This document shows, one piece after another, positions 55,298 to 63,925 of a DNA stretch of 64,000 bases. The position numbers and the translations under genes are program-made. The stretch spans positions 34,100,001-34,164,000 of the forward strand of contig NC_079170.1 in the NCBI RefSeq assembly GCF_947568905.1, written 5' to 3'. Under the pieces are notes generated by a model, which worked only from the letters and a program-made list of their open reading frames with translations, did not search any database and was not told where the DNA came from. Origin of the DNA: Ostrea edulis (Eukaryota). Position 1 is the stretch's first letter, and each line of letters starts with the position of its first letter.

Positions 55298-55801
55298 GTT
55301 AAGATAACGAACAGTGATCAATCACATAACTCTCATAAGGAATACAAAATTTAGAGTTGGACAAACACCGACCTCTGGACGGACCAAAGGTGGGATCAGG
55401 TGCCTAGGAGGAGTAAGCATCCCCTGTCGACCGGTCACACCCGTCATGAGCCCTATATCTTGATCAGGTAAATGGAGTAATCCGTAGTCAAAATCAACAT
55501 GTAAAGAATAAGTATTAATCGCAATTATGTTTACCCATACGTATTGATCATTTAATGAAAAACAAAACACATTAATTCTATTTAATAACAATACGCTTTA
55601 CATTTAAAATACTATGTGTGAAAAAGCTAACACTACAAAACTTAAATAGATACACTTCTGCATTAACATAGTGAGAGGTTAAAGAACATTTTTATACTAA
55701 ATCGCCATCAATTTCAAAAATTCTATCAAGAATAAAAAATTCAGAGAACGGCTAACACGGATCCCTGGAAGCATCAGAGGTGGGATCAGGTGCCTAGGAG
55801 G
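55298..55801 (-). mobile_element. Two Penelope-like 3' fragments (55298-55497, 55745-55801)
   Basis: Reverse match to the common 3' UTR. Confidence 0.85.
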
Positions 55802-55816
55802 ATTGATGCTGACATT

Positions 55817-58057
55817 TTAAATAATTTCACCTCTCTTGATTAAAGCATATTCTCCCATTAAACACCTCTCTGGAAATCGAAGCACTTCCACTGGTATCCA
55901 ATTCTTCACTTGGTTGTATGCAGAATGGCTATTAGATGTTCTCCATTTTACTTTTGAAACACTTTGAGTGTCAAAACCTATGTTCTTTGGTAACTTAGCG
56001 TGGTTAACCATGACGAAAAGTACTTTATTAGCAAGTATTTTCCTAGTTTTCATGTTTTCCATAACGGGAATCAAATGATAATTTTTACAATATGTATCCG
56101 CTAAATATGATGGCGATATGAAGAATATCAATGACAATGAATTATCAATGATGTCGGATGTAATTTCGCTATTTTTTCTCCCGGGGTTGTTCAATTCACA
56201 GTTATTGAGTATAATACCCACTTCCATGTTGTCCTCCAACAGCTTATTGTACAGCTGACTCGTGACGTCAGTTTTATCTTCATCACAACAAAATACATAA
56301 CACGTGTATCTGTACCGGTTTTCTGACAATTCAAGAGGAATTTTCCAACGCAGTAAATCGGATATTTTATTTCTGTGCAAGAATAACATGTATATAACCA
56401 ATGGTGCAATCAAGACAGCGATTGTTTCAAAATAATATCGCTTATTAAGTGACACCACGTGAGAATCGTCAAGAATAGCGTCCCTTGTTAGGTTGCCATG
56501 CTTCAGGTGCAGCATCACCTTGTTCACTTTTTCACTGTTAGAATAATTGTCTAATTGATAAGCATATGGCATTTCTGGAAGTACTACATAAGTATCAGGA
56601 TGCTCAACCGTGACATTAACGAATCTTTTCTTTTCCTTGTCATATTTCAGGCGCCTGAATACAATTTTATGAATACCATAAACAGAAGTATCGGCACACA
56701 TCGAAAACACTGAAACGATATGCCCATGATCAATGTGAAATATATTTTCCATCAATGAACAGCGCAAAGGTACAATAAACCAGTGTCTTAACCCACCGCA
56801 AATGGAGAACATTCTTGTTAGGTAAGAACAGCCGCTACACGAGGCGCCACGTGGCATCTTCTGTGTCTCTTTTCCGTTTATAGAGTATGTTTGTTGAATA
56901 TTCTTCGAATTCCCTTCGATTGCTAGAGTCAACGGATACCAAAATAGATGCAATTCATTCCCAAGTGGTACGAATATCACATCCTGAATTCCGGAGTATT
57001 TTTTCAGTATCTGCTGACTATAAAGATTAGTATAGGTCACAGTTAGAATTTCTGAGGGTATCCTCAATGTCCGATTTATTATACACTCCCCTAAGAACGC
57101 CTTTGTCACTACCTGACACATATATCGTCCATAGTCCCCTTCGTCAATATACGAAATGATAAGATAACTCTCTATAGTGATATATTCTGCGTTTGTGGTA
57201 ATGGAAGTATTTATTTTCATATTTTGATCATCGACATGTATCAACCGATTGTCTTTTTTCCACACTACTGTCAAATTATGAAGACTAGCCGTGAATTGTA
57301 CATTCGTAATTGTACACCGTAAATTTACGAATTCACCAGGGGATTTTAATTCCATACGCACATTTTCCATAGCAGTATTCTCAATATCTGTGGCACAATA
57401 ACACGTTTCACTTTCAATTTTGTATGTTAATGTGTTTCTTGTCTGAAAAGCCGATATATCGAATGTTTCTGTCTTACTGCAAACCTTATTCATAAATGAA
57501 TGAGAGTCCAGCGAAGGCCAAATGGATGGACTTCTTGATTCAAATGAAAAGTTAGAAACGAACAGGTGTTGATATTGCGAAGCGTAGAAATCCGATGTAG
57601 TATAGCACAGAAAAAATAAAACAACACCCCATACCAAGTATAGGAATGAAATCCACAGAATAAATTTGAAACATTTGAGCATATTTTTAAAACATTTAAA
57701 TAGTAAAGTTTCAAGAACGCCTATAGGTTGTATTATAATATTAAACAAACGATATGTGTAAAAGTGTTTGCCTTGTCTGTTCATTACAGTCACATAATGC
57801 CGAATGACAGGATCAGATACTATTTTCAGTGTAACACGTCTGACTATACACAGTGATAGGACACATATAAACATAACAAAATAATCTACAAATACCAGCT
57901 TGTCTTGGTAAAACATGTTGAACAAACATATTATTATGAAATTCAATAGACACGCAATCAGACATATCACAGATATCGTCACTCTTGACTGAATTTCCTT
58001 TTCTTGACGTGAGGCTACTTCATTCAAACTGAAAACAAAAAAGGCGAATGTTAACAA
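55817..58057 (-). CDS. Multi-pass membrane protein with Ig-like ectodomain and C-terminal TIR domain (IL-1R-like architecture); 5' end uncertain
   Basis: 746 uninterrupted codons. Hydrophobic spans at about aa 26-49, 54-72, 129-152 and 546-562. Ig signature VNLRCT..LTVVWKKD..YLIISYIDEGDYGRYMC. TIR-like YRYTCYVFCCDED (box 1) and NNPGR..EITSDIIDNSLSLIFFISPSYL..YC. The listed start is TTG; the first ATG is codon 48; a candidate acceptor lies at 58029-58031. Confidence 0.85.
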   Translation of the reverse strand: MLTFAFFVFSLNEVASRQEKEIQSRVTISVICLIACLLNFIIICLFNMFYQDKLVFVDYFVMFICVLSLCIVRRVTLKIVSDPVIRHYVTVMNRQGKHFYTYRLFNIIIQPIGVLETLLFKCFKNMLKCFKFILWISFLYLVWGVVLFFLCYTTSDFYASQYQHLFVSNFSFESRSPSIWPSLDSHSFMNKVCSKTETFDISAFQTRNTLTYKIESETCYCATDIENTAMENVRMELKSPGEFVNLRCTITNVQFTASLHNLTVVWKKDNRLIHVDDQNMKINTSITTNAEYITIESYLIISYIDEGDYGRYMCQVVTKAFLGECIINRTLRIPSEILTVTYTNLYSQQILKKYSGIQDVIFVPLGNELHLFWYPLTLAIEGNSKNIQQTYSINGKETQKMPRGASCSGCSYLTRMFSICGGLRHWFIVPLRCSLMENIFHIDHGHIVSVFSMCADTSVYGIHKIVFRRLKYDKEKKRFVNVTVEHPDTYVVLPEMPYAYQLDNYSNSEKVNKVMLHLKHGNLTRDAILDDSHVVSLNKRYYFETIAVLIAPLVIYMLFLHRNKISDLLRWKIPLELSENRYRYTCYVFCCDEDKTDVTSQLYNKLLEDNMEVGIILNNCELNNPGRKNSEITSDIIDNSLSLIFFISPSYLADTYCKNYHLIPVMENMKTRKILANKVLFVMVNHAKLPKNIGFDTQSVSKVKWRTSNSHSAYNQVKNWIPVEVLRFPERCLMGEYALIKRGEII

Positions 58058-58839
58058 TAAAAATGAAATTTCATTTGAAGCACGAGAAACGTATTCATCA
58101 CAGTCTAAACGAAAATTAGGGACTCAAATCGGAAATATAATTTGAATTGGGGTGCCACCAATGAGCAAGGACAATGTGACGGTGGAGGTCCGAAGTTCGA
58201 AACTCTGGAATGTTTTGCAAATCGCGCTTGGTCAAAAAAGGTCATATGGGGAAATCTTAGATCCGAGTTCTTCAAGGTGAAACAGCAAACGTCTTGACGA
58301 CGGTTGATCAACAACTTATATCACATTTTTTTAATCATGTAAAGTAATGAAATTATAACGGTCATGAAAATTACATATTAAAGTTACTACTAAGTTAATG
58401 ATATTTCAGTCATATTCATCTAATTTGAGTTGGTGAAATAGGTTGTATATATCTAGAAAATATGTCTGCTCCGGGCACTACTTTCACTTGCGATGGGTTT
58501 TTTTATCAATTAAAGTCACTAGCCCTCTAAAATTTTCCCAGTGAAGTACATTAATACATTACACGTTTAGTTGCATTCAAAAAATGGTTCATACACAATT
58601 AAACTAGAACACAGAAGTACGTTATTTATTGGATATTAGTTGTTGTGAATGATGGTGCGCTTGAAATTTTCCATTCATTTATCTCATAATTGATCAGCGT
58701 CCGTTGAACACTTTCAACCGAAAACTACCATTACAATTGTTTTCAATTTTTACGAAAACTTGGCCGATTTCCGAAAATAGCCTTCTCTACAACATCACAT
58801 CGGTAAGAAAAAATCATTGCATAGTTGTATAAAGCAGTG

Positions 58840-59110
58840 AGGCCTTTACCAAAATTACAAATGTCATGATCTTCGGGATAGAGGTTCTAACTCCAGGGTG
58901 GGGCCAAATTGGGTATATAGTGTTTAGGTGTAAAACATTTCAATACCATAATCTTTAATGCTGTTGATACTAAATACTAGATTCTGATTAAATATATATA
59001 TTTAAAAGGAGAATGTGTCCTTTACCAAAATTGTAAACTTCATGATCCAAGGACAGGGATTCGGTTTCGATTGGGACCAAAATTATGATAGCGACCATTT
59101 TGTTTAACAA
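58840..59110. repeat. About two degenerate monomers resembling the oyster Cg170 satellite
   Basis: CCTTTACCAAAATT(A/G)..AA.(G/T)TCATGATC...GG.GTGGGGCCAAA repeated about 165 bp apart; family identity is from memory. Confidence 0.6.
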
Positions 59111-61204
59111 CATCTTATAATATTTATATTTCAATATTGTGAAAAGCTTTGGGACATTATTTCCCATCCATATTTATTATTTCTTTACAGAAATGTATTA
59201 TTTAAGTGTGCGAAGATAAATAATAAACTTTTCCTGCTGTTCATTAACATTACAGACAAAATCCATGCAGTCAGCTTAGTGCTTCGCAGTACTTTCAGTA
59301 CTTTGATCTCTTTTAAATGTACAATTAGATTGTAATCAGAAAGTGAATACACGAAAATATGGTTTATAGTTTGTTATTCTAAAATGGAAAATCAAACTCA
59401 GTCAACCCTAAGGCAATATTTGACAACATGTACTTGGTCGTCAACGACAGATGTAGTCCGAGGTATAAAGACATGCATTATGATTGAACTTTAGAGAGAG
59501 TGGGAAAGATTGAAAATAGTTTTAGTCGATTTTTGTCTCCTTTTTGGGGTGGAGGGATCTTCTCAAGATGTATTCTTCTGTGTGTTAATCCGTTTTTTAA
59601 AGTATTTAAATTAAACGTGCTTTACCACAAAACAGAGTTGCGTATCAACTTTAAGGTAACTCCATACTCGCAGTTTTATCTGATACAAGTTTGAAAAATG
59701 TATTTATTTCCATTCATTAGAGTTAAAACTAACAAATTATCAAATAAAATACATATGTCATCACACTTTTTAAGATACGAGACGTACATAAACAGAATCA
59801 TATATCACCGTCAGAAAATTGCAATTTTCCTTAAACAGCGTTATCAAAATTTCATACAAACTGGTTATGACGATATAGTAGCATTCATAACAATTTCATG
59901 AAACTGTATCTTCACAAAAATATACGAAATGTCTGTAAAAATAAAGGAAATCTATCGCATAATAGACTTGATAAAGAAATCAATAGAAACAGAGTTATTG
60001 CCCTTGGATTCAATAATTTAAAACGTAACATTGATTATTCATTTATAACTTAGACTTTTAAAATAATTTATTTTTAACAAGATTTTTTACAATAACTATC
60101 GGAAAAGACTCCAACAAAATTTATGTTCCTATCACGCATAAATGTAAATAAATCATTGATTTTGCAAAATCTGATGACATCACAGGAGGGTGGAATTACT
60201 TTAAATGGTCTTCGATATTTTGATGGATAAATAAACTTATAGAGCAGACATTCAAGCTTTATATGTAAAAATAGGTTTTACAGTTGATCGATATTGATTT
60301 CTCCTCATTTTATCCAGGTTGTAAGGTTAGCTACAATGTGTTTACATTCGCAAAATATACAGAGCAATGACCCCTCTATATGTATCTCTACATTTACAGA
60401 AATAAATATAAACAATGTCAACTGAAATTTGTCACTTTACCTTGTTTCCGGCATTGTCATCCGATAAAAGACAAAGGGTATTTAGATCCAATTCCAAAAT
60501 CCTCTTACTAAGTACAAATACGTACTTTTCCAACTCGGAGCGACATTAATTCGGCCCCTCTGTCAAGTATTTCAAATCTATTTCAAAACTTGAGTTATAA
60601 TGCCGGAAAAAGATTTCATTAATATTATGCAATATTTCTTTTAAAGAGTTCTCTTTGGATTTAAAGGTCCTCTTTCTAACTATGAAATGCAAGCATTGCG
60701 AAATCCAAACAAAATCAACAAAGACATAGGCATATAGCATTAGAGGGATGACTTTACAATTTTCTGAAAATTGTTAACACGCATTGCATAACTGATATAG
60801 GAGTAGTTTTACTTCAGAATCCTAAATCGTGTAGGGGAGCTAATGAAGGTGTTACAATCTATATCATGCATGTTAGTTTGTCGCGACAGCAGACACCGAG
60901 AATCAAACCCAGGCTTCCGGTTGCTAAAAAGACGCCGTAATCGCTAGGTTTTTGTGACCGACATCGTGATACGTTTTAACGCAGTCCTATACCTACGTTT
61001 TCCATCCAGTATTCTTGTCACTGCTTGTTTGTTAATTAATTCTAATGAGCCACAAAAACAAACAATTGTAATGGTGAATGGGGAATTACAAACATCCGAG
61101 AAAAATTCTTTAAAAAAATCAGAAGCTAGATAGAGCAACTTACCAGAGTCAGAGTAAAACATGCTACAATTACAACTACCAAGGTTCATGCTTCAGATCA
61201 CCCT

Positions 61205-63443: not shown

Positions 63444-63761
63444 ACTTGACTTACTTGACTTAATTCCTTCTCTCCTCGTGGAGAATAGGGCCATGAACAA
63501 GTCTTCTCCATTTACTTCTGTCCTGGGCTGATCGTGCTGCCTCTGTCCATGACCCAAAACCCAGTTCTTTCTTCTCTCTTTCTATTGTTCTTCTCCACGT
63601 TTCCTTCGGTCTTCCTCTCTTTCTTTTTCCTTCTGGTGTCCAACTAAGGGCTACATATGGGTGTGTTCTTTTATCCATCCGTAGCACATGTCCAATCCAC
63701 TGCCATCTGCGTGTTTTTATCATAGTGCTCATCTTTGCTACTCCTGCTATCTCTCTAACTG
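63444..63761 (-). mobile_element. RTE-clade LINE 3' end
   Basis: RRWQWIGHVLRM...ALSWTPEGKRKRGRPKETWRRT...AQDRSKWR* followed by an (AAGTC/AAGTAAGTC)n tail. Confidence 0.9.
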
Positions 63762-63925
63762 CAAGGTGAAGATAACGAACAGTGATCAATCTCATAACTC
63801 CTACAAGCAATACAAAATAGATTGTTGGGCAAACACGGACCCCCGGGCACACCAGAGGTGGGATCAGGTGCCTAGGAGGAGTAAGCATCCCCTGTTGACC
63901 GGTCACACCCGCCGTGAGCCCTATT
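63762..63925 (-). mobile_element. Penelope-like 3' fragment abutting the RTE 5' truncation
   Basis: High-identity reverse match to 6620-6788. Confidence 0.9.

What the first reader, a model, noticed from the sequence alone, without database searches (positions are those of the whole stretch)
55817..58125. Single-exon, multi-pass Ig-TIR receptor: an atypical IL-1R-like architecture
Seen: 2.2 kb without introns encoding at least three N-terminal hydrophobic spans, a canonical Ig domain, a second Cys-rich divergent module, a further TM and a divergent TIR. The frame is open 22 more codons upstream and includes another hydrophobic stretch (ISFLLLTFAFFVFSL). Known: IL-1R-family proteins are single-pass with a signal peptide, and TLRs use LRRs. 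I know of no characterised receptor with extra N-terminal membrane spans ahead of Ig-TM-TIR. With three N-terminal spans both termini would be cytosolic. It converges on the IFI44L pair and may be a lineage-specific immune sensor, perhaps retroposed (inference). This is the best candidate for an undescribed system in the window.
Basis: partly seen in the sequence, partly recalled or inferred. Interest (0 to 1): 0.78.

Follow-up and report, generated by a model that had tools for sequence, protein, structure and literature searches.

The report
Multi-pass oyster Ig-TIR membrane receptor
This flat-oyster gene encodes a real but unstudied immune-type receptor with two antibody-like domains outside the cell and a TIR signalling domain inside. 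Unlike known receptors of this kind, it starts with several extra membrane-spanning helices, and relatives with the same design occur in other oysters, clams and a snail.

Summary
The open frame is real. It lies on the minus strand at 55817-58028 and is NCBI's Ostrea edulis LOC125654039 (743 aa, "uncharacterized").

- The gene is not strictly single-exon. Twenty coding bases (MTMPET) lie in an upstream exon at 60441-60460.
- The "22 extra codons" are the intron's polypyrimidine tract, not protein.
- The "Cys-rich module" is a second, divergent Ig-like domain.

**Confirmed**
- Three strong N-terminal hydrophobic helices.
- A canonical Ig domain and a further membrane helix.
- A genuine receptor-type TIR (fold Z 16 to IL-18Rbeta and IL-1RAcP TIRs).
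- The residue at the NADase glutamate position is His, so a scaffold TIR is likelier than an enzyme.

**Family**
- The architecture is shared by a small, wholly uncharacterised family: several oysters, Mercenaria, and the snail Pomacea, plus a shorter Sinanodonta relative.
- In the sister clade the N-terminal membrane region is as conserved as Ig1.

**Cautions**
- I found no RNA evidence.
- A common O. edulis allele carries a stop at codon 56.
- The helix count and topology are not settled.

I read it as a new variant of the Ig-TIR (IL-1R-like) receptor kind. The scan's notes show no earlier record of this family.

The parts
60441..60460 (-). Coding part of exon 1: ATG ACA ATG CCG GAA ACA AG (MTMPET plus two bases of Ser7). 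A GT donor follows at 60439-60440.
   Evidence: The pattern has a unique match in the window, with 0 expected by chance. The sequence reads AAG|gtaaag. The NCBI product P0001 starts MTMPETSLNEV.
58029..60440 (-). Intron of 2412 nt. It holds high-copy repeats at about 59479-60274.
   Evidence: The acceptor ttttgttttcag ends at 58029. Genomic DNA contigs run straight through it, and depth spikes mark the repeats.
55817..58028 (-). Exon 2: the rest of the coding sequence (aa 7-743) plus the TAA stop at 55817-55819.
   Evidence: The match to P0001 is 100% identity over aa 7-743.
57920..57976 (-). Membrane helix 1 (aa 25-43, ISVICLIACLLNFIIICLF).
   Evidence: Kyte-Doolittle 19-residue mean 3.0. Approximate insertion energy -4.1. 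AF2 helix 8-46.
57842..57898 (-). Membrane helix 2 (aa 51-69, LVFVDYFVMFICVLSLCIV). It contains codon 56 (57881-57883), which is TAG in a common allele.
   Evidence: for the helix. for the nonsense allele.
57665..57841 (-). Basic loop, aa 70-128, with 11 K/R against 2 D/E. It is predicted cytosolic and includes a weakly hydrophobic helix, LFNIIIQPIGVLETLLF.
   Evidence: Net charge +9. AF2 models helices 80-91 and 96-163 at low pLDDT.
57608..57664 (-). Membrane helix 3 (aa 129-147, FILWISFLYLVWGVVLFFL). It leads out to the ectodomain.
   Evidence: This is the best-conserved N-terminal segment among the paralogues.
57395..57559 (-). Short beta-strand region before Ig1 (aa 164-218). It is not classified.
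   Evidence: AF2 strands 164-167, 188-196 and 209-218, with pLDDT about 80-86 over aa 190-220.
57092..57358 (-). Ig domain 1 (aa 231-319), canonical with the Cys245-Trp263-Cys311 triad.
   Evidence: Pfam ig E 5.2e-5. Family profile against titin 3e-31 and IL1RAPL1 3e-9. AF2 pLDDT mostly 81-93 (one 10-residue block at 71). NCAM2 Ig1 Z 8.9.
56576..57052 (-). Ig2-like domain (aa 333-491). It is a divergent beta-sandwich with an insertion of about 50 aa that carries a helix. Cys407 and Cys451 are conserved, and the motif HPDT..VLP is the hallmark of the family.
   Evidence: The module folded alone gives pTM 0.69. All 50 best VIA matches are Ig domains, Z 7.6-8.8 with about 90 aa aligned. Foldseek matches are weak, best E 2.5e-3, and nearly all are Ig-type domains.
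56378..56467 (-). Stalk end and membrane helix 4 (aa 528-557; hydrophobic core 539-557).
   Evidence: AF2 helix 528-557.
55889..56317 (-). TIR domain (aa 578-720). The BB-loop Pro622-Gly623 is kept. His658 sits at the position of the TLR6 'YEL' glutamate, which I equate from memory with the catalytic Glu of NADase TIRs.
   Evidence: VIA Z 16.3 to IL-18Rbeta, 16.2 to IL-1RAcPb, 16.0 to Hydra TRR-2 and 13.7 to SARM1. Profile against TLR6 1.8e-11, with residue alignment. pLDDT 82-92 over aa 580-680, 71-85 beyond.

Best explanation
**Shown**
- LOC125654039 is one member of a small, uncharacterised mollusc family of polytopic TIR membrane proteins.
- In order, the product has:
  - a short N-terminal tail;
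  - an unclassified membrane module, with three strongly hydrophobic helices here and up to five hydrophobic peaks in the sister clade;
  - a region of about 390 aa holding one canonical Ig domain and one divergent Ig-like domain;
  - a fourth membrane helix;
  - about 20 residues later, a receptor-type TIR domain.

**Inferred topology**
- Both termini are cytosolic.
- The two Ig domains form an extracellular (or luminal) loop held in the membrane at both ends.

**Inferred mechanism**
- It works like an Ig-TIR receptor or co-receptor of the IL-1R, SIGIRR or sponge/cnidarian IgTIR kind.
- The Ig loop binds a ligand or a partner receptor.
- That binding brings the TIR domains together.
- The clustered TIRs recruit MyD88-type TIR adaptors by TIR-TIR assembly.
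- It probably does not act by NAD+ cleavage, because His replaces the catalytic-position Glu.
- The N-terminal module probably serves as an uncleaved anchor and an oligomerisation or trafficking platform. That last point is a guess.
For: **Gene model**
-.

**Hydrophobic helices and charge**
- The loop before the last N-terminal helix is net positive in 15 of the 16 relatives that have an N-terminal helix; it is neutral in P0021.
- All 7 N-glycosylation sequons of this protein lie in the predicted ectodomain.
- Across 17 family members the sequon density is 1.44 per 100 aa in the ectodomain, 0.76 in the C-terminal cytosolic part and 0.48 in the N-terminal part.

**Domains**
- Ig1.
- Ig2-like fold.
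- TIR: (5 of 25 members reach Pfam TIR, best 5e-10).
- His at the Glu position, and the kept Pro-Gly of the BB loop.

**Family**
- The O. edulis genome holds five further related loci; four share the multi-helix N-terminus and one is a short form with a single N-terminal helix. Each has one large open frame.
- The exhaustive profile search found only 39 relatives among 1.84 billion representatives.
- Relatives with a species name come from Saccostrea, Mercenaria, Crassostrea angulata, Sinanodonta and Pomacea. None has a functional name.
- The match to the Pomacea protein is collinear from Ig1 to TIR, E 2e-11 and 2e-16.

**Constraint on the N-terminal module**
- In the sister clade its mean pairwise identity is 46.5%, against 46.4% for Ig1.
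- That clade shows five conserved hydrophobic peaks separated by basic loops.

**Literature context**
- Oysters have expanded MyD88-like adaptors, and 'IG-TIR' is a counted class in the C. gigas immunome (PMC4346834).
Against: **No sign of expression**
- No RNA run holds the exon.
- The runs I laid on the locus proved to be genomic DNA.
- The exon 1 to exon 2 junction therefore rests on NCBI's model and on canonical splice signals only.

**A common broken allele**
- Many O. edulis copies carry Tyr56 changed to a stop. This is seen in 2 of 4 laid runs and in four further Logan contigs from ERR and SRR runs.
- One of those contigs also has a 2-nt deletion.
- Among the listed coding differences, 11 change an amino acid, 3 are silent and 1 is the stop.
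- So this paralogue may be dispensable or decaying.

**Uncertain N-terminal model**
- AF2 confidence there is low, pLDDT 50-68, and one helix is modelled as 68 residues long.
- No dedicated topology predictor was available.
- The N-terminal sequences of this clade and the sister clade barely align.

**No functional data**
- Ligand, adaptor binding and immune role are all untested.
Confidence: 0.6

Rival explanations
1. This locus is a dispensable or decaying paralogue, a polymorphic pseudogene. The family may be functional, but LOC125654039 itself is being lost. The intact reference allele is then one of several haplotypes, some of them null.
For: - The Tyr56-to-stop change (57881 A>C) is on the only contig covering that place in runs X1 and X3.
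- The same change is in four further Logan contigs from two run series, linked to the same neighbouring variants.
- One of these haplotypes has an extra 2-nt deletion.
- Run X3 shows a possible 1-nt insertion at 56319.
- Amino-acid-changing differences outnumber silent ones 11 to 3.
- No RNA holder was found.
Against: - The reference allele is open over all 743 codons.
- Runs X2 and X4 carry the reference base at codon 56.
- In three of the four nonsense-allele contigs the frame stays open for up to about 290 codons after the stop, to the contig end.
- Contig X1 has fewer differences per base in the exon (about 0.4%) than in the intron (about 1.3%) (my count).
- The X3 insertion lies 35 nt from a contig end, amid clustered mismatches, so it may be an artefact.
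Confidence: 0.25
2. The N-terminal helices are not part of the working receptor. Translation, or a second promoter, starts downstream at Met59 or at Met123 (MLKCFK followed by a hydrophobic run, which resembles a signal peptide). The product would be an ordinary Ig-Ig-TM-TIR type-I receptor.
For: - The nonsense allele at codon 56 is followed three codons later by an ATG and an open frame.
- Met123 plus helix 3 has the n-region, h-region and c-region look of a signal peptide (sequence).
- Removing the helix 1-2 hairpin would not change the topology of the rest.
Against: - These methionines are not conserved in the paralogues.
- The frame is open from the splice acceptor onward in all family members. 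In the sister clade the ATG sits at the very start of the membrane module.
- That module is as conserved as Ig1.
- Initiation at codon 59 or 123 would have to skip at least three upstream in-frame ATGs.
Confidence: 0.1
3. It is a decoy or negative regulator rather than an activating receptor. Like SIGIRR, it would sequester adaptors or partner receptors without signalling.
For: - The TIR is divergent: it is below the Pfam threshold on its own, and the profile search drew very few generic TIR hits.
- The SIGIRR TIR is among the sequence matches, E 5e-7.
Against: - The BB-loop Pro-Gly is kept in this clade.
- The best structural matches are signalling co-receptor TIRs, IL-18Rbeta and IL-1RAcP, at Z 16.
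- Nothing here tells activation from inhibition.
Confidence: 0.15
4. The TIR is an NAD+-cleaving enzyme, as in SARM1 and in plant and bacterial TIRs. The protein would be a membrane death or alarm effector.
For: The model aligns with the SARM1 TIR (Z 13.7) and with bacterial NADase TIRs (Z 9-12). This reflects the common fold only.
Against: - The profile alignment to TLR6 puts His658 at the position of the 'YEL' glutamate. His658 is conserved among the three closest paralogues.
- The sister clade, P0013 and Mercenaria have Gln there.
- That this position equals SARM1 Glu642, and that the Glu is required for catalysis, is from my memory of the literature and was not tested here.
Confidence: 0.03

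Closest known systems
IL-1 receptor family (IL-1R1, IL-1RAcP, IL-18Rbeta, IL1RAPL, SIGIRR)
   Same: - Extracellular Ig domains, a membrane helix, and a cytosolic TIR about 20 residues after the membrane.
- The TIR model's best structural matches are IL-18Rbeta and IL-1RAcPb (Z 16.3 and 16.2).
- Ig1 matches the IL1RAPL1 Ig domains at 3e-9.
   Different: - IL-1R proteins have a cleaved signal peptide and cross the membrane once. This protein has three or more extra N-terminal membrane helices, so its Ig region is a loop anchored at both ends.
- It has two Ig-like domains rather than three (or one in SIGIRR), and the second carries a large insertion.
- Sequence identity in the TIR is only 17-20%.
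- Orthology is unlikely. The literature holds that the Ig-TIR combination arose more than once (PMC5094078).
Invertebrate Ig-TIR proteins (sponge IgTIR, cnidarian IL-1R-like, the oyster 'IG-TIR' class)
   Same: - The Ig + TM + TIR domain combination in non-vertebrates (PMC5094078; PMC10279657; PMC4346834).
- This family would be counted as IG-TIR by a domain census.
   Different: - The descriptions I could read give a single TM and no N-terminal polytopic module.
- The divergent Ig2-like domain, with its HPDT..VLP motif, is specific to this mollusc family.
Toll-like receptors and Hydra TRR-2
   Same: - Receptor-type TIR. The best sequence matches of the family profile are the TLR6, TLR10, TLR1 and TLR2 TIRs and Hydra TRR-2, at 1e-11 to 1e-9.
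- Most of the coding sequence lies in one exon, as in many TLR genes (background knowledge).
   Different: - There are no leucine-rich repeats.
- The protein crosses the membrane several times.
Immune receptors with N-terminal clusters of membrane helices (anemone NLRs with 3-5 N-terminal TMDs)
   Same: A cluster of 3-5 membrane helices is placed at the N-terminus of an innate-immune signalling protein (PMC5094078).
   Different: - The signalling module is different (NACHT-LRR rather than Ig-TIR).
- No sequence relation was shown.
- This is an analogy only.
CD47 (IgV domain plus five membrane helices)
   Same: An Ig domain joined to a multi-span membrane module in one chain (from memory, not tested here).
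   Different: - The order is reversed: in CD47 the Ig comes first, then the helices.
- CD47 has no TIR.
- No similarity was detected.

Membership tests
TIR domain superfamily | Flavodoxin-like TIR fold | tested here: met
   AF2 residues 578-720 have pLDDT 82-92 over aa 580-680, 71-85 beyond. VIA gives Z 16.3, rmsd 2.2, 133 aa to the IL-18Rbeta TIR. The top 15 rows are all TIR domains.
TIR domain superfamily | Significant sequence match to TIR models | tested here: met
   This protein alone is below Pfam's cut-off, 16.9 against 21.3 bits. The family profile matches the TLR6 TIR at 1.8e-11 and 36 other solved TIR-domain proteins. Five of 25 members reach Pfam TIR, best 5.2e-10.
NADase-type TIRs (SARM1, plant TNL, bacterial Thoeris and others) | Catalytic glutamate in the alpha-C region | tested here: not met
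   His658 aligns with the Glu of the TLR6 'YEL' motif. Other clades have Gln, and only the Pomacea relative has Glu. That this column is the catalytic one rests on my memory of the literature.
IL-1 receptor family | Signal peptide and a single membrane pass (type-I topology) | tested here: not met
   Three strongly hydrophobic segments precede the ectodomain. The module is conserved in the family. Cleavage was not testable here.
IL-1 receptor family | Three Ig domains in the ectodomain (one in SIGIRR) | tested here: not met
   There is one canonical Ig and one divergent Ig-like domain, plus a short unclassified beta region.
IL-1 receptor family | Orthology, or binding of an IL-1-type cytokine | not testable with these tools
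   No phylogeny rooted with vertebrate IL-1Rs was built, and no ligand is known. TIR identity is 17-20%.
Immunoglobulin superfamily | Ig fold with the Cys-Trp-Cys core | tested here: met
   Pfam ig scores 23.9 bits, above the 21.8 cut-off. C245, W263 and C311 are conserved among the three closest paralogues. The family profile matches titin at 3e-31.
Toll-like receptors | Leucine-rich-repeat ectodomain | tested here: not met
   No member has an LRR family hit.
TIR-TMEM268-like proteins (noted elsewhere in this genome by the scan) | TMEM268/DUF4481-like two-helix membrane module | tested here: not met
   Pfam scans of ten N-terminal regions at E up to 5 gave no DUF4481 hit and no family shared by two members.

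The most novel reading that the evidence does not exclude
Molluscs may have a distinct class of TIR receptors with two unusual features. The ligand-binding Ig region is an extracellular loop clamped between a polytopic N-terminal membrane module and a C-terminal helix. The membrane module also takes an active part, for example by sensing a membrane-borne or lipid signal, or by gating TIR clustering through helix-helix rearrangement. That would be an activation mode not known for TLRs or IL-1Rs.
Probability: 0.15. Interest if true: 0.75.

Novelty: new variant of a known kind. Interest (0 to 1): 0.45.

Why it matters
TIR receptors are the core of animal innate immunity. All characterised ones that I know of, from memory and from the papers I could search, cross the membrane once.

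A conserved family that ties the sensing domains to the membrane at both ends would widen the known designs of TIR receptors. It would also add a concrete, testable candidate to the large and mostly unexplored set of bivalve TIR proteins.

The flat oyster suffers from Bonamia and other diseases. A receptor gene with a common null allele is a natural candidate for association studies.

The value is limited for now by the lack of any expression or functional evidence.

Tried and rejected
**Searches that gave nothing useful**
- RNA evidence:
  - Two run searches found no RNA holder.
  - The four runs I laid down proved to be genomic DNA, because their contigs run through the intron.
  - Expression therefore stays open.
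- Logan contigs of relatives also look genomic; L007 has an acceptor site just before the ATG.
- The word-based protein search with the family alignment returned only the three close paralogues.
- Atlas searches:
  - The N-terminal part gave no usable feature hit, and structure matches were at or below TM 0.47 by the query to unrelated bacterial helical proteins.
  - The middle part gave only weak Ig-type leads, at or below 0.88.
- Pfam on ten N-terminal regions at E up to 5 gave no shared family.
- Foldseek on the middle module gave nothing at E 0.001 or better. I call that module Ig-like from the uniform Ig hit lists at middling scores, so this is a fold assignment of moderate strength.
- Gerdol et al. 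2017, the main census of bivalve TIR proteins, is not held. A prior description there cannot be excluded.

**Readings I rejected**
- Retroposed gene: related loci share the large coding exon preceded directly by a splice acceptor.
- NADase: no Glu at the aligned position.
- Fourth upstream hydrophobic span: it is intron.

**Not done**
- I sent no complex prediction, because no binding claim is made.

**Caveats**
- A 19-residue window gives helix counts that vary with the threshold.
Full report
**1. What is in the sequence**

- The window is Ostrea edulis, G000 contig 7, 34,100,001-34,164,000.
- The minus strand carries one very long open frame. It ends with TAA at 55819-55817 and is open back to 58125.
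- The exact product, apart from its first residues, is NCBI's "uncharacterized protein LOC125654039", 743 aa (P0001).
- That model begins MTMPET-SLNEVASR.
  - The open frame has no in-frame ATG until its 70th codon.
  - A textbook acceptor (ttttgttttcag) ends at 58029.
  - MTMPET is encoded once in the window, at 60460-60441, and is followed by AAG|gtaaag.
- The coding sequence is therefore exon 1 (20 nt) + a 2412-nt intron + exon 2 (58028-55817).
- "Single-exon" is nearly right (99% of the coding sequence) but not exact.

**2. Domains**

- *Hydrophobic segments.* Two hydrophobicity scales pick the same four in P0001: aa 25-43, 51-69, 129-147 and 539-557.
- *Basic loop.* The loop between the second and third segments (aa 70-128) has 11 K/R against 2 D/E.
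- *Pfam on this protein alone.* It gives ig above threshold and TIR below threshold.
- *Family profile against solved structures.*
  - Ig matches: titin 3e-31, IL1RAPL1 3e-9.
  - TIR matches: TLR3 4e-10, TLR10 and TLR6 about 1e-9.
  - The TIR part alone matches TLR6 at 1.8e-11, and also Hydra TRR-2, IL-1RAcP, SIGIRR, TIRAP and MyD88.
- *AlphaFold model of the whole protein* (25-sequence alignment, mean pLDDT 72.9):

| Region | Residues | pLDDT |
|---|---|---|
| N-terminal helices | 8-46, 52-78, 80-91, 96-163 | 50-68 |
| Ig1 | 231-319 | 81-93 (one block 71) |
| Second beta domain | 333-491 | 61-92 |
| Membrane helix | 528-557 | about 59-71 |
| C-terminal alpha/beta domain | 578-720 | 71-92 |

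- *C-terminal domain.* An all-against-all structural search puts it squarely among TIR domains: IL-18Rbeta Z 16.3, IL-1RAcPb 16.2, Hydra TRR-2 16.0, C. gigas TIR-STING 15.4, MyD88 14.9, SARM1 13.7. The refutation test "the C-terminus does not model as TIR" fails; it is a TIR.
- *Middle module.*
  - Folded alone it gives pTM 0.69.
  - It returns only Ig domains: all 50 best VIA rows, Z 7.6-8.8, about 90 residues aligned across the module.
  - Foldseek matches are weak and nearly all are Ig-type domains.
  - I read it as a divergent Ig-like sandwich with an insertion of about 50 residues that carries a helix.
  - Conserved Cys407 and Cys451 and the family hallmark HPDT..VLP lie in it.
  - At these scores the fold call is of moderate strength.

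**3. TIR details**

- The HMMER alignment to TLR6 places the family's consensus Gln, His658 in this protein, opposite the Glu of TLR6 "YEL".
- From memory of the literature, that column is the catalytic glutamate of SARM1 and of plant and bacterial NADase TIRs. It is necessary for activity but not sufficient.
- His658 is conserved among the three closest paralogues. The sister clade, P0013 and the Mercenaria protein have Gln. The Pomacea relative has Glu.
- The BB-loop Pro-Gly (P622-G623) is kept in this clade.
- I conclude that this is a scaffold-type receptor TIR and that NADase activity is unlikely.

**4. Family and distribution**

- The O. edulis genome has at least six related loci.
  - Each has one large open frame.
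  - The window gene has two paralogues of 47-49% identity, one of them about 80 kb upstream on the same chromosome.
  - Two members of 28-29% identity lie on another chromosome.
  - One shorter form has a single N-terminal helix.
- An exhaustive profile search of 1.84 billion representatives found only 39 proteins at E 0.001 or better.
- Members with a species name come from Saccostrea cucullata, Mercenaria mercenaria, Crassostrea (Magallana) angulata, Sinanodonta woodiana and the gastropod Pomacea canaliculata. All are called uncharacterized or hypothetical, apart from one automatic "TIR domain-containing protein" label.
- The Pomacea protein aligns collinearly from Ig1 through Ig2-like and the membrane helix to the TIR (E 2e-11 and 2e-16). 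It has its own N-terminal hydrophobic segments.
- The design therefore predates the bivalve-gastropod split. It is not an oyster novelty.

**5. Is the N-terminal membrane module real protein?**

Yes, for the family.
- In the sister clade, across 27 sequences, its mean pairwise identity is 46.5%. Ig1 is 46.4%, and Ig2-like and TIR are about 59.5%.
- Family-averaged hydropathy shows five peaks, four clear and one weak. Two of the loops between them are basic, and conserved N-x-S/T sites lie in the alternate loops. This fits five spans with the N-terminus inside.
- In that clade the ATG sits at the start of the module, directly after an acceptor.
- In the window protein three helices are strong. 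A fourth and fifth are at best weak.
- Either count is odd. With the basic loop before the last helix and the enrichment of sequons in the Ig region (7/0/0 here; 1.44 against 0.76 and 0.48 per 100 aa in the family), the likely topology has both ends cytosolic and the Ig loop outside.
- No Pfam family, Atlas cluster or known fold could be assigned to the module.
- AF2 confidence there is low. No dedicated topology predictor was available.

**6. Cautions specific to this locus**

- No RNA run holds the exon.
- The four runs laid on the locus are genomic DNA.
- In two of those four runs the only contig at 57881 reads C instead of A. That turns Tyr56 (TAT) into TAG.
- The same haplotype, with F37C, V58A, S171T, I198R and T208K linked, is present in four more Logan contigs from two run series.
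  - There a gene caller split the frame at exactly this stop.
  - Three of them stay open downstream to the contig end.
  - One has an extra 2-nt deletion.
- Listed coding differences are 11 amino-acid-changing, 3 silent and 1 nonsense.
- So the reference allele is intact, but a broken or N-terminally shortened allele is common.
- The gene may be dispensable, as with many bivalve immune paralogues. Less likely, a product may start at Met59 or Met123.

**7. Mechanism, with the steps marked**

- *Shown:* the domain order, the TIR and Ig folds, conservation of the membrane module, and the absence of the Glu.
- *Inferred:* the topology; ligand or partner binding by the Ig loop; and TIR-TIR recruitment of MyD88-type adaptors, which are expanded in oysters (PMC4346834).
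- *Guessed:* the N-terminal module acts as an uncleaved anchor or an oligomerisation platform.

**8. Comparison and novelty**

- It works like an Ig-TIR receptor: the IL-1R family, sponge IgTIR, cnidarian IL-1R-like, and the "IG-TIR" class counted in oyster immunomes.
- It fails two defining features of the IL-1R family, single-pass type-I topology and three Ig domains.
- It has no LRRs, so it is not a TLR.
- I found no paper describing N-terminal polytopic Ig-TIR proteins.
- The key census (Gerdol 2017) could not be read.
- Anemone NLRs with 3-5 N-terminal TMDs are an analogy.
- The scan's own notes record other odd membrane-TIR designs in this genome (TIR-TMEM268-like), but not this family.

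**Verdict:** a real, conserved, undescribed architecture. It is a new variant of a known kind, of moderate interest, held back by the lack of expression and functional evidence and by the common nonsense allele.

Noticed in passing
window 57881 (codon 56 of LOC125654039); loci L009-L012: A common O. edulis haplotype has TAT changed to TAG (Tyr56 to stop) inside membrane helix 2, linked to several amino-acid changes. It appears in 2 of 4 laid DNA runs and in four further Logan contigs. One contig (L011) adds a 2-nt deletion at 57868-57869.
   Followed up: yes
protein P0015 (NCBI MES1922029.1): A 111-aa 'hypothetical protein, partial [Bonamia ostreae]' is a close relative of the N-terminal membrane module of this oyster family (profile E 3.5e-18). 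Because the family is otherwise molluscan, it is probably host oyster DNA or RNA carried into the parasite's assembly.
   Followed up: partly
window 55320-55800, 59479-60274 and 63460-63906: Very high-copy repeats begin about 15-40 nt after the stop codon and fill part of the intron; depth reaches 1e5-1e6 in every run. A shared motif that translates to MLTPPRHLIPPLV recurs at 55322-55591 and at 63460-63906.
   Followed up: no
L006 (G000 contig 8, 28311267-28312598) and protein P0036: A short paralogue form of about 526-554 aa has only one N-terminal hydrophobic segment, one Ig, the Ig2-like domain, a membrane helix and a TIR. It is a possible intermediate between ordinary Ig-TIR proteins and the multi-pass form.
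   Followed up: partly
window 56319-56335 (run X3 only): A 1-nt insertion and four clustered amino-acid-changing differences lie just before the TIR-coding part, within about 50 nt of a contig end. This is either a more degraded haplotype or an assembly artefact.
   Followed up: no
G000 contig 7, 34073621-34075711 (L003): The paralogue LOC130048053 lies about 80 kb upstream of this gene (about 24 kb before the window's start), on the opposite strand. The family is therefore locally duplicated next to the IFI44L genes that the scan noted in this window.
   Followed up: partly
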